A DNA stretch of 28,999 nt, from the NCBI GenBank assembly GCA_033442325.1, contig JAWQFM010000019.1:922143-951141 (forward strand). The letters run 5' to 3'. The notes beneath the pieces are model-generated. The model made no database searches. It was not told where the DNA came from and was given only the letters and a program-made list of their open reading frames with translations. Shown piece by piece: positions 2,540 to 23,820 of the stretch (positions are counted from its first letter, which is position 1; each line of letters begins with the position of its first letter). The stretch comes from Salpingoeca rosetta (Eukaryota; Protista; Choanoflagellata). Made by a program: the position numbers and the translations under genes.

Positions 2540-5500
2540 TTACACGTGAGACATGGTGGTCGTGGTCTCGCCATCAAAGTCATCGTAGAAAGGGCGGCCA
2601 TAAGAGGAGGTGCTGCGACCGCCATGGAGCTCGAAGGAGGCCCGGCTTGCCTGTGCTTGGTGGGCAACGACCATCGGTGGCTCTTTGACCGCGTAGGTGT
2701 GTTTGCGGAACGAATACACGATGCGCTGCACCTCAAGGACAATCACAACTAGCACCAGCACGAGGATTGCGTCTAAGCAGCGCAATGCAGAGTAGCAAAC
2801 AGCAGGGTACAAGGTTGAAGGNNNNNNNNNNNNNNNNNNNNNNNNNNNNNNNNNNNNNNNNNNNNNNNNNNNNNNNNNNNNNNNNNNNNNNNNNNNNNNN
2901 NNNNNNNNNNNNNNNNNNNNNNNNNNNNNNNNNNNNNNNNNNNNNNNNNNNNNNNNNNNNNNNNNNNNNNNNNNNNNNNNNNNNNNNNNNNNNNNNNNNN
3001 NNNNNNNNNNNNNNNNNNNNNNNNNNNNNNNNNNNNNNNNNNNNNNNNNNNNNNNNNNNNNNNNNNNNNNNNNNNNNNNNNNNNNNNNNNNNNNNNNNNN
3101 NNNNNNNNNNNNNNNNNNNNNNNNNNNNNNNNNNNNNNNNNNNNNNNNNNNNNNNNNNNNNNNNNNNNNNNNNNNNNNNNNNNNNNNNNNNNNNNNNNNN
3201 NNNNNNNNNNNNNNNNNNNNNNNNNNNNNNNNNNNNNNNNNNNNNNNNNNNNNNNNNNNNNNNNNNNNNNNNNNNNNNNNNNNNNNNNNNNNNNNNNNNN
3301 NNNNNNNNNNNNNNNNNNNNNNNNNNNNNNNNNNNNNNNNNNNNNNNNNNNNNNNAAACAGGTCCGTGGGCGCCAGCGACGCAACACGCACACGTGTCAC
3401 GACAATGCCCGTGGCGTTGGCAATGTCTGCCTCAATGCGCGCGTCACGTTCTGGTACTCGGGCGATTTCGTGTTGAAAAACGCGTCTTCAAATGGCAGCG
3501 GTAGCTCGATGCCCGTCAGCTGTGTCGTCAGCGCCTCCGCAGCCACAAGCGCAAACTGGAACTCGAGCACAAACTCCTGTGACGCCACGTTGCCGTACGG
3601 GTCCTGGACGCTGTTCAGAGTCACGCGCGCCGAGCGGCCGCTCACGTCATCCCACGCGAACCCGCGCACCAGGGACATAGTGATGCGGCGGCCCTCGCAC
3701 ACCATCACCATGTCGTCGTTCGCAAACACTTCGTCCAGCCCGTCAATGGTCATCTGCACCTCAAACCAGAACGGCTTTGCGCACTGCACGTCCTCGTCAA
3801 ACTCAAACGCAATCTCGTCCCCGGGTGAGTACTCCCCGTCCGCTGGCTCCGGGTACCCCAGGACCTGTGGCGCCGACCGGTCAATCACGCCCGTTGCTGT
3901 CGAAGAGTACTGCTCGTCAATGCCATCCGGCACCTCGTTGATCGACGCCGTGCACTGCGCGCGAATGCGCAGCTCGTAGTCGCCGTCCGTGATGCCGGAC
4001 ACGTCCCAGTAGATGGTCACGTAACCGTACTCATTCTCCATCAGTCGCAGGTCCAGCGTATTGCCGTCAATGTCACGCGCCAACAGCCACACGGAGGAGG
4101 CGGCGGGCTTGTACTCGACGTACACGCCCTCAAGCCTGTCGTCTTCTGTCCACTTGCGGTTTGCAAAGTCCGAGTTGAACGCAACGATGCGCAGCTCGCC
4201 AGGGTGGGAGGTTTGCTCGTCCACAGCTTGGTTCACCTCAAACGTCTCCGTCTCGCCAATCGAGCCCACCAGCTCAACAGGACTGCATGGCTGCAGGAAC
4301 TCGGCCTCCAGGTACACATATTGGACAGTGGTCACTTCATCGGTTGTGTAGCCGTTGTCGGGGTGCCTGTCTGCCTCGCACAGGGATCGCCAGCCAACAG
4401 CAACGGGATCATATGAATAGAGACTTGGTCCACGAAGAAGTGAGATTGTCACGTGGCGCGCGCCAACTGCAAAGCCCTCAAAGTCGATGGGGTGTGTCAG
4501 CGGATGGCCATCCACCATGATCGTCAGGCCGTCCTGGTTCGCACCGTTCAAGGTGAAGAGCTGTCCATGTGCAACGATACATCAACATCGCCACAAACAA
4601 GAACGCGCATACTGAGGTGAGCAGAAAGTTAACCACACAAAGGTGAAGCAGCAGCACATACAAGCGCACGTAGGGATCCAACTCAACACAAGCAGAAGTA
4701 TCGACGCACACACACACACCATACGCACAACACCCACGTTCAAGTCGGTCACACACATATATATACATACGACACCCACGTTAAAGTCAGTGGCGACAGG
4801 ACCGTCATTGGTGAGCAAGAGCTCGAACACAGCCGGCTCATTGGGTAAGACAGGTGCAGCAGGTTGCTTGAGAATGCTGATCCGTGGGTTCTCCAAGGCA
4901 ATGGTGTTGTTCTCGGGCGGGCAGGATGACTGGCCAGAGGTGGTGTGAAACACCAGCGTGCCAAAGTCAGGGTGCACGTACACCTCAACATCGAACACAT
5001 CCAGTGGATCAGCGTCACCAAGTTCAAACCCAGCGCTGCTCTCCTTCGCATAGCCTTCCTCCGTTTCCCTGCTCGTCTCCACCTCCGCCAGCCCCAACGC
5101 CGTGACGGAGAAATCAGCCCCGCCAGTGCTGGATGAAATGTCAAAGCTCACGGTGCCACCGCCCTCAAAGCTGCTCATGCTCTTGGACGATGACACAACG
5201 CTCTTGTGGTTGCTGTAGTCAAAGGAGAAGGAGTAGAGGGACCCCCCACCAGCAAACTTGATGGCGCTAATCTCTCGCAACGTGGCCTGATCTTCGCCAG
5301 TCGTGTCTGTGCCATCCAGGTTCTTGGCGTTGTCGATGTTGTCGTTGGGTGCGAACGCAATGCTCCTGTTCACCTTGCCCTGGATCGGGTTCGCGTTTTC
5401 GTTGGTCAGGTACTTGCCCGCCGTCCACAGCGACTGCACCTTCTCCAGCGTGCCACTGGCAGCGCTGTTGCGCACGTTGCGGTTCCGCTGCAGGTTGTCG

Positions 5501-22600: not shown

Positions 22601-23820
22601 TTCACCACAAAACACACATGTACACACATATGCACACACACGCTCACACGCACACGCGCGCGCATACACACTCACACGCACACTGTTGGCAGGTGTGCCT
22701 GTGCTTTGAGGCAAGCACCCGCTCAACCGCTACCACTGTGACGACGACGACAGAAGTCACTTTCACCACACAGGTGACCGGCACTGTGGAAACCATCGCC
22801 GGCAACGGCCTGGTGGACTGGACGGGGTCGAGTGACCCCACAGCAACGGGCCTCAACCAGGCCGAGTGCGTTGCCGTGGACGTGACGGGCGCCACGTACA
22901 TTGCCATCCGCCACCGCGTCGTGAGCATCTCGCGTGACGGCAGCACCATCACCACCATCGCCGGCACCAAGACCCGCGGGTCCGCTGGCGTTGGCGGCCT
23001 GGCCACAGCTGCGCAGCTGGACCGCCCCACGTGCGTGGCCGTCGACACCATCGGCAACGTGTACATCTCGGAGAAGGGCAACCACCGTGTCAGCGTCGTG
23101 GACGCAAGCACGGGCGTCCTGTCTGTGTTTGTCGGCACGGGCGAGGCCGGCCATCGTGGCATGGGCGGCTCAAGTCGCGCGGCGCAGATCCACTCCCCGC
23201 ATGGCCTTGCGTTCGACAGCCGCGGCACGCTGTACATTGCCGACACGGAGAACCATGTTGTGTACGGTGTGGACCGACGCTCCCTTGTGATTGACGTCGT
23301 TGCTGGCACGCCCTTCCGCAAAGGATACCACGGTGACGGCCGCCCAGCCACAACCGCGTGGCTCAACGCGCCCACGGGCATTGCTGTTCGCGGTGCGGGT
23401 GATTTGTACATTGCTGACACGGGCAACAACCGCATCCGCTACGTTGATCTGGACAGCGACAACATCATCGACACATTGGTTGGCACGGGCCGCTACGGCG
23501 GTGATGTGGACGGCAGCACGACCACTGCTGCGCTTGAGACGAATCTGGACCACCCTGAAGGCGTTGCTGTCAATGCAGAGGGCACCACGCTGGTCATTGC
23601 AGACACAAACAAGCACGTGCTGCGGTCTGTGAGCTTGAACGGCGATGATTCCCCGGTGACCGTGCTTGCAGGCACGGGCAGTCGAGGCTTCAACGGCGAC
23701 GGGAACGATCCAACCGCCACCAAGTTCCGCTCACCCGTCAGCGTCGCCTACGACATTGGCGAACGCGCAATTGTGTTTGTGGACCAGCAGAATCGTCGCA
23801 TTCGACGCGTGCACCTTTGA
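13671..23820 (+). CDS. Secreted dermatopontin-sushi-NHL protein, 30 predicted exons, 1,455 aa: 13671-13799, 13961-14162, 14301-14402, 14720-14819, 14990-15084, 15476-15730, 16007-16186, 16353-16414, 16554-16602, 16834-16899, 17012-17125, 17339-17404, 17572-17682, 17857-17925, 18129-18275, 18549-18614, 18776-18901, 19107-19301, 19469-19534, 19675-19800, 19960-20043, 20216-20341, 20501-20644, 20896-20942, 21133-21187, 21328-21393, 21563-21688, 21926-22068, 22296-22418, 22693-23820
   Basis: Signal peptide (MSTVAATLLIAALIYMQPAEA; the start could be 13722). All 29 introns are GT-AG with matching phases, and the summed exon length of 4,368 nt is one open frame. No TM segment seen. Confidence 0.85.
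13785..16602 (+). other. Two tandem dermatopontin-like domains, each followed by a short 2-Cys linker
   Basis: Six repeats: YDRRWDFSC, VDRLWKYTC, WDRRWKITTC; then TDRRWAFTC, QDRVYSFQC, SDREWTFTEC. Confidence 0.85.
15350..15431. repeat. (GT)n intronic microsatellite
   Basis: Directly visible. Confidence 0.95.
16834..21688 (+). other. Seven six-Cys sushi/CCP modules: six in tandem at 16834-19800 and one at 21328-21688, separated by a degenerate dermatopontin-like domain
   Basis: Consensus C-x2-L-x3-NG-x3-G-x-C-x-G-x2-GD-x-C-x-Y-x2-C-x2-GY...R-x-C...W-x-G-x4-C repeated seven times. Confidence 0.88.
22770..23820 (+). other. NHL-repeat beta-propeller (about six repeats), intronless
   Basis: Repeats such as AQLDRPTCVAVDTIGNVYISEKGNHRV, IHSPHGLAFDSRGTLYIADTENHVV and LNAPTGIAVRGAGDLYIADTGNNRIR, with G-x-x-GDG...A linkers. 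Confidence 0.92.

What the first reader, a model, noticed from the sequence alone, without database searches (positions are those of the whole stretch)
2540..23820. Head-to-head pair of dermatopontin-sushi paralogues: one membrane-anchored, one secreted
Seen: two large genes diverge from a 1.3 kb spacer. Both begin signal peptide - VNEY - three DRxW repeats - 2-Cys linker, later reach the same six-Cys sushi module, and share intron positions. Their C-termini differ completely: one ends in SEA-like/TM/cytoplasmic tail, the other in a soluble NHL propeller. Known: dermatopontin-family proteins, including Limulus amebocyte aggregation factor, are small secreted matrix, adhesion or agglutination proteins in animals. 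Inference: an inverted duplication followed by domain shuffling produced a co-regulated receptor plus soluble cross-linker, a candidate adhesion, aggregation or prey-capture system in a probable unicellular relative of animals.
Basis: partly seen in the sequence, partly recalled or inferred. Interest (0 to 1): 0.85.

Follow-up and report, generated by a model that had tools for sequence, protein, structure and literature searches.

The report
Paired adhesin genes in a choanoflagellate
Two back-to-back genes of the choanoflagellate Salpingoeca rosetta, one a giant membrane-anchored adhesin-like protein and one a secreted protein with the same dermatopontin-sushi head, form a two-gene cassette that exists seven times in the genome, was always duplicated as a unit and is switched on together in substrate-attached cells.

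Summary
The window is Salpingoeca rosetta (GL832976.1). The minus gene is PTSG_07442 and the plus gene is PTSG_07443. Their start codons lie 1,290 bp apart. Both open with a signal peptide, VNEY and a Pfam DERM domain, followed by six-Cys sushi modules. The plus gene has two DERM domains, about seven sushi modules and a C-terminal NHL propeller.

Both assembly gaps hide coding sequence. A 92-97% identical copy of the whole pair on contig C23 (PTSG_11057/11058) shows about 154 and 118 missing residues. The transmembrane exon sits on a 314-bp island between two gaps. A 1-nt frame difference beside the gap truncates the annotated model.

New here:
- This is one of seven head-to-head cassettes in the genome.
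- The trees of the two partners are congruent, so the pair duplicated as a unit.
- Published RNA-seq shows tight co-expression (r = 0.96), highest in attached (thecate) cells.
- The membrane protein has an Ig-like stalk, a SEA-like module with a conserved polybasic site, and a tail ending S/T-x-V.

The scan's first stage separately noted another head-to-head dermatopontin pair on other DNA of this genome.

The parts
2543..2770 (-). Last coding exon of the membrane gene: TM helix plus a 62-aa cytoplasmic tail ending S-H-V, then the stop codon
   Evidence: 100% identical to P0177 residues 2273-2348. Reading frame shown. It lies on the 314-bp island 2508-2821 between two gaps, which is 100% identical to C23.
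2822..3355 (.). Assembly gap hiding about 118 aa: most of the SEA-like module with the conserved polybasic RRRR site, plus an S/T-rich linker
   Evidence: The C23 copy has 536 bp here. P0177 residues 2155-2272 have no match in the window. Alignment A2.
3356..3442 (-). Start of the SEA-like module, read in a different frame from exon 14. There is a 1-nt difference from the paralogue near 3440.
   Evidence: It is either an assembly error beside the gap or a real frameshift; this is unresolved (one search found no S. rosetta fragments).
3400..4560 (-). Exon 14 of PTSG_07442: three tandem Ig/FN3-like beta-sandwich domains (the stalk)
   Evidence: Exact mapping of P0178. AF2 model with pLDDT 87. 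Foldseek matches tandem Ig/FN3 arrays and bacterial giant adhesins at E of 1e-6.
4780..7167 (-). Exon 13: 796-aa conserved block with no Pfam match
   Evidence: 612 relatives, mostly 2,000-3,000-aa protist surface proteins.
7268..7367 (.). Assembly gap hiding about 154 aa (a CarboxypepD_reg/transthyretin-like part in paralogues)
   Evidence: The C23 copy has 562 bp here. P0177 residues 776-929 are unmatched. Weak TTR-52 and CarboxypepD_reg hits in relatives.
7619..9916 (-). Exons 8-12: unassigned region, S/T-rich mucin-like stretch and Cys-containing modules
   Evidence: Exon mapping. No significant Pfam match.
10123..10248 (-). Calcium-binding EGF exon
   Evidence: PF07645, 34.9 bits. Exon mapping.
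10477..10896 (-). Six-Cys sushi module in two exons (10831-10896 and 10477-10605), split by a phase-1 intron
   Evidence: Sushi scores 16.9 bits on P0177, below the cut-off. InterPro Sushi is listed for PTSG_07442 in the supplement of PMC4054682.
11112..12380 (-). Exons 1-4: signal peptide, VNEY, DERM domain with three DRxW repeats, and a 2-Cys linker
   Evidence: DERM scores 139 bits on the paralogue.
12381..13670 (.). 1,290-bp divergent spacer (candidate bidirectional promoter)
   Evidence: It is unique in the genome and not alignable with the spacer of the C23 copy.
13671..13799 (+). Exon 1 of PTSG_07443: signal peptide ending in VNEY, followed by a GT donor
13961..15084 (+). DERM domain 1 (four predicted exons).
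   Evidence: PF14704 at 51.5, 26.3 and 15.7 bits on the pieces. Model.
15476..16441 (+). DERM domain 2 (three exons; the boundary of the third is uncertain)
   Evidence: PF14704 at 53.3, 35.7 and 20.2 bits..
16554..19800 (+). Six six-Cys sushi modules. Five are split by a phase-1 intron and one is a single exon (19107-19301).
   Evidence: Sushi at 19.4, 22.0 and 17.6 bits.
19960..21187 (+). Cys-containing region of about 150 aa with no family match
   Evidence: It is conserved in the C12 partner.
21328..22418 (+). Seventh sushi module and a Cys-rich linker
22693..23820 (+). Last exon: Thr-rich linker, six-bladed NHL propeller, stop codon
   Evidence: NHL 79.4 bits and TEN_NHL 66.8 bits. Exactly seven such exons exist in the genome, all open.

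Best explanation
SHOWN.
- The window holds one copy of a conserved two-gene cassette of Salpingoeca rosetta.
- Gene A is PTSG_07442; its full form is seen in the 95-97% identical PTSG_11057. It encodes a type I membrane glycoprotein of about 2,350 aa. From the N-terminus it has a signal peptide, DERM, six-Cys sushi, cbEGF, a mucin-like stretch, a long stalk that includes tandem Ig-like beta-sandwiches, a SEA-like juxtamembrane module with an invariant polybasic (furin-type) motif, one TM helix, and a short tail ending S/T-x-V/A.
- Gene B is PTSG_07443, a secreted protein of about 1,450 aa. It has a signal peptide, two DERM domains, about seven sushi modules and a C-terminal NHL propeller.
- The two genes are transcribed divergently from a 1.3-kb spacer.
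- The cassette exists seven times and was copied as a unit at every duplication.
- Both genes of this copy are under purifying selection.
- Both rise together, 8- to 30-fold, in substrate-attached thecate cells.

INFERRED.
- B is a multivalent matrix (theca or substrate-coat) component.
- A is the cell-surface anchor that engages B, most simply through their related DERM-sushi heads.
- A is possibly processed at the polybasic site.
- A is possibly tied to a cytoplasmic PDZ-type partner through its tail.
- Different cassettes serve different life stages.
For: - Identity of genome and genes.
- Domains.
- Whole-pair duplicate on C23 and the content of the gaps.
- dN/dS of 0.15-0.28 in both genes.
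- Seven cassettes: DERM exon hits, block loci, partner architecture with an NHL exon at 43-60% identity at all loci, and exactly seven NHL loci, all paired. The NCBI annotation shows the same head-to-head layout for PTSG_03009 and PTSG_07192, with partners of 1,484 and 1,448 aa carrying DERM, Sushi, DERM and NHL.
- Co-duplication: both genes give the topology ((C12a,(win,C23)),(C4b,(C24,(C1,C4a)))).
- Co-expression, from the supplement of Fairclough 2013 (PMC4054682). [quoted passage not shown]
  - PTSG_07442: 5.2, 43.4, 32.6, 3.7, 0.27, 1.9, 2.4, 0.16
  - PTSG_07443: 9.5, 88.3, 71.5, 17.4, 4.9, 8.7, 9.8, 3.2
  - log2 r = 0.96 for this pair and 0.99 for PTSG_03009/03008.
- Stalk fold.
- SEA-like fold and the invariant RRRR motif.
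- Conserved tail ends.
Against: - There is no direct evidence of binding. The one complex prediction (A head against B propeller) gave no verdict.
The plus-gene exon model is therefore my own prediction (1,427 aa, against 1,455 aa in the NCBI model), and transcription starts are unknown.
- In this copy the link from DERM to the TM segment is broken by two gaps and a 1-nt frame difference. The TM exon island is identical to the C23 copy, so it could be mis-scaffolded.
- Hundreds of genes are thecate-upregulated (a cluster of 783), so co-expression alone is not specific.
- The near-identical C23 pair is poorly correlated (r = 0.25), and reads may cross-map between the two copies.
- Neighbouring genes are copied together by segmental duplication whether or not they interact.
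- The Monosiga brevicollis homologue checked has no DERM head and no such partner.
Confidence: 0.5

Rival explanations
1. The two proteins are independent matrix or surface components that happen to share a bidirectional promoter. They stay together only because segmental duplications copy neighbours and the short shared control region is hard to split. They do not bind each other.
For: The duplicated unit on C23 ends within a few bases of both stop codons, as expected for a simple segmental copy. The complex prediction gave no support (this is not evidence either way). Many thecate matrix genes share this expression pattern.
Against: Seven of seven membrane genes of this subfamily kept their partner, and seven of seven partners kept their membrane gene. 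This held through six duplications and down to 43-60% protein identity, with all NHL exons still open. The sister subfamily of membrane genes has no such partner.
Confidence: 0.27
2. The cassettes are matched recognition pairs (self/non-self, mating or kin recognition). Each membrane protein would recognise its own secreted partner, as in divergently transcribed allorecognition pairs of social amoebae.
For: There are seven co-duplicated pairs with congruent trees. The partner evolves faster than the membrane gene's stalk (path lengths of about 2.0 against 0.9). Different cassettes peak in different cell types: PTSG_07192 in swimmers and colonies, this pair in thecate cells.
Against: No polymorphism data exist. 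One member is secreted rather than membrane-bound. Expression in solitary attached cells fits matrix or substrate adhesion better.
Confidence: 0.1
3. The proteins are lectin-like binders of bacteria (prey capture or sensing). The idea follows the haemagglutinin/aggregation-factor side of the DERM family.
For: One paralogue is named haemagglutinin/amebocyte aggregation factor by NCBI. That label is homology-derived and is not a test.
Against: All feeding stages capture bacteria, yet this pair is 8- to 30-fold lower in swimmers and colonies. No carbohydrate-binding test exists.
Confidence: 0.07
4. In this particular copy the frameshift near 3440 is real. PTSG_07442 would then make a truncated, secreted 1,938-aa protein without a membrane anchor, and only the C23 copy would be membrane-bound.
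For: The assembly reads that way, and NCBI annotated it so.
Against: The difference sits 85 bases from a gap. Other frame shifts occur at the other gap's edge, which suggests low-quality ends. More than 3,500 bases of adjacent exons are open, with dN/dS of 0.2-0.26.
Confidence: 0.1

Closest known systems
Dermatopontin / Limulus 18K haemagglutinin-amebocyte aggregation factor (Pfam DERM, PF14704)
   Same: The DERM domain has three D-R-x-W repeats and conserved Cys, well above the Pfam threshold. The proteins are secreted or extracellular and fit an adhesion or matrix role.
   Different: The canonical proteins are small, single-domain and secreted. Here DERM is the head of a 2,350-aa membrane protein, and is doubled at the head of a 1,450-aa sushi-NHL protein.
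The ten 'DPT/Ca2+ EGF' genes of S. rosetta listed as HGT candidates by Matriano et al. 2021 (PMC7971027)
   Same: PTSG_07442 and PTSG_11057 are in that list. The paper suggests a role in theca production.
   Different: That paper, in the passages I searched, does not describe the head-to-head NHL partner, the seven-fold cassette, the co-duplication or the co-expression. The stalk's relatives are mostly protist surface proteins.
Dictyostelium tgrB1/tgrC1 divergent allorecognition pair (from my own knowledge)
   Same: Two adhesion-type genes in head-to-head orientation, co-expressed, and proposed to act as a matched pair.
   Different: Both Tgr proteins are membrane-bound Ig/TIG proteins and are highly polymorphic. 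Here one member is secreted, and polymorphism and binding are untested.
Giant adhesins and mucin-type receptors with a SEA module (MUC16, TMPRSS family, bacterial SiiE-type adhesins)
   Same: A rod of tandem beta-sandwich domains. A juxtamembrane alpha/beta module whose best fold matches are SEA domains. A single TM helix and a short tail.
   Different: There is no Pfam SEA match and no G-SVVV autoproteolysis motif. A conserved polybasic motif sits in a loop instead.
Teneurin NHL domain (PF25021)
   Same: The partner's propeller matches TEN_NHL at 66.8 bits, so it is an extracellular six-bladed NHL propeller.
   Different: No YD shell, no EGF array and no TM segment. The domain context is entirely different.

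Membership tests
Dermatopontin family (Pfam PF14704) | Match to the DERM profile above the gathering score of 28.3 bits | tested here: met
   139.4 bits on P0177. 51.5 and 53.3 bits on plus-gene exons. 54.6 bits on a minus-gene exon.
Dermatopontin family (Pfam PF14704) | Threefold internal repeat with D-R-x-W/F and paired Cys | tested here: met
   Motifs at 11995, 11594 and 11202 on the minus strand, and at 14039, 14336 and 14997 on the plus strand. The second plus domain has DRRW, DRVY and DREW.
Dermatopontin family (Pfam PF14704) | Small (about 20 kDa) single-domain secreted protein, as in the canonical members | tested here: not met
   The proteins are about 2,350 aa and about 1,450 aa and are multidomain.
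Sushi/CCP (PF00084) | Profile match above 20.7 bits, with four conserved Cys and a Trp | tested here: inconclusive
   Scores of 16.9, 17.6, 19.4 and 22.0 bits; only one exon passes. The modules carry six Cys. InterPro Sushi is listed for both genes in the supplement of PMC4054682.
NHL repeat propeller (PF01436 / PF25021) | Repeated NHL motifs forming a six-bladed propeller | tested here: met
   NHL at 79.4 bits (cut-off 20) and TEN_NHL at 66.8 bits (cut-off 27.1).
SEA domain (PF01390) | Sequence match to the SEA profile | tested here: not met
   No SEA hit on P0177 at E up to 0.05. The profile of A2 against PDB sequences found nothing. Only a distant homologue, P0006, gives 16.5 bits, below the cut-off.
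SEA domain (PF01390) | SEA fold (alpha/beta sandwich next to the membrane) | tested here: inconclusive
   The AF2 model has pLDDT 72. The top seven Foldseek hits include six SEA domains (MUC16, TMPRSS6, transmembrane protease), but at E of 0.01-0.06 and TM-scores of 0.3-0.6.
SEA domain (PF01390) | G|SVVV-type autoproteolysis motif | tested here: not met
   It is absent from alignment A2. An invariant RRRR stretch is present instead.
Matched receptor-ligand gene pair (tgrB1/tgrC1-like) | Divergent orientation with co-expression | tested here: met
   Spacer of 1,290 bp. log2 r = 0.96 over eight samples.
Matched receptor-ligand gene pair (tgrB1/tgrC1-like) | Direct binding between the two products | tested here: inconclusive
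   The single complex prediction gave no verdict. The DERM-DERM pairing could not be submitted because the partner's DERM domains are split over exons.
Matched receptor-ligand gene pair (tgrB1/tgrC1-like) | High allelic polymorphism | not testable with these tools

The most novel reading that the evidence does not exclude
The seven co-duplicated cassettes form a pre-animal adhesion code. Each membrane protein would preferentially bind its own secreted DERM-sushi-NHL partner. Different cassettes would be deployed in different life stages (thecate cells versus swimmers or colonies), so that cell-matrix attachment specificity is set by which cassette is switched on.
Probability: 0.12. Interest if true: 0.8.

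Novelty: new variant of a known kind. Interest (0 to 1): 0.6.

Why it matters
S. rosetta is the main experimental model for the unicellular ancestry of animal cell adhesion, and it has working CRISPR genetics. A membrane adhesin and a secreted partner share an animal-type matrix domain, have been kept as a unit through six duplications, and are induced together when cells attach and build a theca. This gives a concrete, testable candidate for how a relative of animals couples the cell surface to its own extracellular matrix. It also corrects the annotation: PTSG_07442 is truncated by assembly gaps. Finally, it reframes genes previously listed only as HGT candidates.

Tried and rejected
There is therefore no read-level test of splicing, transcription starts, the frameshift or copy-specific expression. 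From then on those places were masked in scripts and sent to no search tool. They lie in a predicted intron.
- Complex prediction (A head, P0178 residues 22-300, against the B NHL propeller) gave no verdict, with a score of 0.00. This is not evidence either way.
- I tried to fetch the partner's annotated protein with a mixed alignment as query. It returned only membrane-type proteins.
- The last protein search, with exon 14, found only environmental relatives at 53-62% identity and no S. rosetta fragment bridging the frameshift.
- PDB sequence search and the Atlas feature search with the 805-aa block were uninformative.
- The AU test of a locus-specific sister relation between the two DERM heads gave p = 0.087, which is not decisive.
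- Literature searches for the PTSG identifiers and for NHL plus sushi in choanoflagellates found nothing in main texts.
- I considered that the block is bacterial. I rejected this as the main reading because the relatives with known sources are choanoflagellates, diatoms, a dinoflagellate and Paulinella, and they carry eukaryote-type heads.

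
Full report
**What the window is.**
The 805-aa open block on the minus strand has 612 relatives. The best hit is Salpingoeca rosetta PTSG_07019. blastx of the window against the S. rosetta paralogues shows that P0178 (PTSG_07442, 1,938 aa) is encoded here exactly, in 14 exons running from 12380 down to 3400. 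The look-up of encoding contigs places the gene on GL832976.1 of GCA_000188695.1. Immediately upstream on the other strand lies a 1,455-aa DERM+NHL gene, and an argininosuccinate-lyase-like gene lies downstream. Supplementary tables of Fairclough et al. 2013 identify the partner as PTSG_07443, annotated Sushi + NHL.

**Check of the observation.**
- VNEY and three DRxW motifs occur on each strand at the stated places.
- The two ATGs, at 12380 and 13671, are 1,290 bp apart.
- Pfam confirms DERM on both strands. It also shows that the plus gene carries two tandem DERM domains.
- The minus gene continues with a six-Cys sushi module and a calcium-binding EGF domain. About 2,000 residues without any Pfam match follow.
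- I built a plus-gene model using codon usage and GT-AG sites. It has 29 exons and 1,427 aa, against 1,455 aa in the NCBI model. In order it contains a signal peptide, DERM1, DERM2, six sushi modules, a Cys-containing region without a family, a seventh sushi, a Cys-rich linker, and a Thr-rich linker with an NHL propeller in one 1,128-bp exon. This model has no read support.
- Intron positions are shared only in part. Shared are the phase-1 intron after the first DERM repeat (present in all three DERM domains), the phase-1 intron closing the DERM linker, and the phase-1 intron in the middle of the sushi module. The others differ.

**The gaps.**
The region 2508-23824 has an inverted copy on contig C23 (1158448-1179548) at 92-97% nucleotide identity, introns included. 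Its membrane gene is PTSG_11057 (P0177, 2,348 aa).
- That copy shows what the gaps hide. Gap 7268-7367 stands for about 562 bp with an exon of about 154 aa. Gap 2822-3355 stands for about 536 bp with about 118 aa.
- Sequence next to both gaps is out of frame with the paralogue. Near 3440 the window lacks one base of a GC run. That shifts the frame and gives the stop at 3397 where the NCBI model ends.
- The TM/tail exon (2543-2770) is present. It sits on a 314-bp island between two gaps, and that island is 100% identical to C23, while the rest of the duplicate is 92-97% identical. Its assignment to this locus therefore rests on scaffolding.
- The adjacent long exons are open, and dN/dS against C23 is 0.20-0.26 (0.15-0.28 in the plus gene). 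This argues that both copies are functional and that the frameshift is more likely an assembly error. I could not settle the point.

**The cassette is repeated.**
- A scan of the genome with the DERM profile gave 76 exon-level hits, and several loci show hits on both strands facing away from each other.
- The stalk block occurs at 14-15 loci in two subfamilies.
- At six further loci (C23, C12, C24, C1 and two on C4), a membrane gene of the window's subfamily lies head-to-head with a gene that has two or three DERM domains, sushi modules, the same Cys-rich linker and a terminal NHL exon 43-95% identical to the window's.
- The genome holds exactly seven such NHL exons, all open and all in these pairs. 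An OrthoMCL cluster in the 2013 paper also lists seven S. rosetta members.
- The NCBI annotation shows the same layout for PTSG_03009 and PTSG_07192.
- The other membrane subfamily (PTSG_07019-like) shows no facing DERM partner in these scans.

**Duplication as a unit.**
Trees of the membrane gene's exon-14 homologues and of the partner's NHL exons have the same topology, ((C12a,(win,C23)),(C4b,(C24,(C1,C4a)))). The main splits are at 96-100% support in both trees.

In a tree of 32 DERM domains the labels 'membrane type', 'partner D1', 'D2' and 'D3' need the minimum of 5 changes, whereas labels by locus need 12. Membrane-type and partner-D1 domains group together at 88/85 support. Forcing the window's two heads to be sisters costs 15.5 log-likelihood units, with AU p = 0.087, so this is disfavoured but not rejected. 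An inverted duplication of the head is thus plausible, but it predates the seven-fold expansion.

The spacer and the partner's exon 1 are not alignable between the C19 and C23 copies, although the gene bodies are.

**Expression.**
In the supplement of PMC4054682 the table header reads AtA, AtB, AtAB (attached), SwB (swimmers), CoA1, CoA2, CoAB (rosettes) and ChB (chains), followed by log2Fold(Attach/Colony) and related columns. The held copy's caption says 'colonial', but the header and the values show attached-cell enrichment.

|---|---|---|---|---|---|---|---|---|
| PTSG_07442 | 5.2 | 43.4 | 32.6 | 3.7 | 0.27 | 1.9 | 2.4 | 0.16 |
| PTSG_07443 | 9.5 | 88.3 | 71.5 | 17.4 | 4.9 | 8.7 | 9.8 | 3.2 |

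- For PTSG_07442, attach versus colony is log2 4.9 with P = 1e-19.
- The log2 correlation within this pair is 0.96, and 0.99 for PTSG_03009/03008, which are also nearly equimolar.
- It is only 0.25 for the C23 pair, whose partner is also expressed in swimmers and colonies.
- PTSG_07192 peaks in swimmers and colonies, so cassettes differ in stage.
- Caveats: hundreds of genes are attached-cell enriched, and reads may cross-map between the near-identical copies.

**Anatomy of the membrane protein.**
- Exon 14 folds (pLDDT 87) into three beta-sandwich domains. These match tandem Ig/FN3 arrays of adhesion molecules and bacterial giant adhesins.
- The last 190 extracellular residues are conserved in all ten paralogues and carry an invariant RRRR stretch. 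The model (pLDDT 72) is an alpha/beta sandwich whose best, weak fold matches are SEA domains. There is no SEA sequence match and no autoproteolysis motif.
- All paralogues have one TM helix and a short tail with an acidic Pro/Phe motif, and most end S/T-x-V/A.
- Homologues of the stalk occur in other choanoflagellates, diatoms, a dinoflagellate, Paulinella and many metagenomic proteins, with various adhesion-type heads.
- The Monosiga brevicollis homologue examined has no DERM head and no facing partner.

**Interpretation.**
The structural and evolutionary statements above are shown. The functional reading is inference from architecture, from linkage conserved through six duplications, and from co-induction in attached cells. 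It holds that the secreted protein is a matrix component and the membrane protein its anchor, probably through their related heads. The single complex prediction I could submit gave no verdict.

**What is known.**
Matriano et al. 2021 list PTSG_07442 and PTSG_11057 among ten 'DPT/Ca2+ EGF' HGT candidates and suggest a theca role. I found no description of the partner gene family, the cassette or its co-duplication. The scan's first stage had separately noted another head-to-head dermatopontin pair on another contig, which agrees with the recurrence found here.

**Restriction observed.**

Noticed in passing
window 10364-10480 (intron of the minus gene): A dispersed repeat of about 115 bp with more than 100 copies at 80-90% identity across many contigs, often in local clusters. 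It may be a SINE-like or satellite element.
   Followed up: no
window 12385-13928 versus G000:C23:1168303-1169275: The intergenic spacer and the partner's first exon are the only parts of the 21-kb duplicate that do not align between the two copies. The C23 partner (PTSG_11058) also has a broader expression pattern than PTSG_07443.
   Followed up: partly
window 2508-2821: This 314-bp island between two gaps is 100% identical to the C23 copy, while the flanking homologous sequence is 92-97% identical. Mis-scaffolding or gene conversion are both possible.
   Followed up: partly
window 74-1660 (+): A long open frame with a strong Lyase_1 match (222 bits). NCBI annotates a 343-aa Lyase_1/ASL_C2 gene here, probably argininosuccinate lyase.
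   Followed up: no
P0177 about residues 2165-2175; hidden in window gap 2822-3355: An invariant polybasic RRRR(R) stretch sits in the juxtamembrane module of all ten paralogues and of a distant metagenomic homologue. It is a candidate proprotein-convertase site.
   Followed up: partly
G000:C22:494912-499821: Another head-to-head pair of DERM-containing genes that lacks the stalk block and the NHL exon. It is a different kind of DERM pair.
   Followed up: no
L042:21965-26023 (GL832970.1, next to PTSG_07192): A 1,330-aa Ty1/copia-type retrotransposon polyprotein (RVT_2) lies directly downstream of one cassette.
   Followed up: no
L032 (Monosiga brevicollis CH991558.1): Two tandem 2,340-aa homologues of the stalk protein carry JmjC/cupin-type matches in place of a DERM head. 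This explains the 'Cupin superfamily' names of the diatom homologues.
   Followed up: no
window 11462 (minus strand): The NCBI model PTSG_07442 uses a GC donor here, and the model of the paralogue splices differently (…VDR|LYSV). One of the two models is probably wrong at this junction.
   Followed up: no
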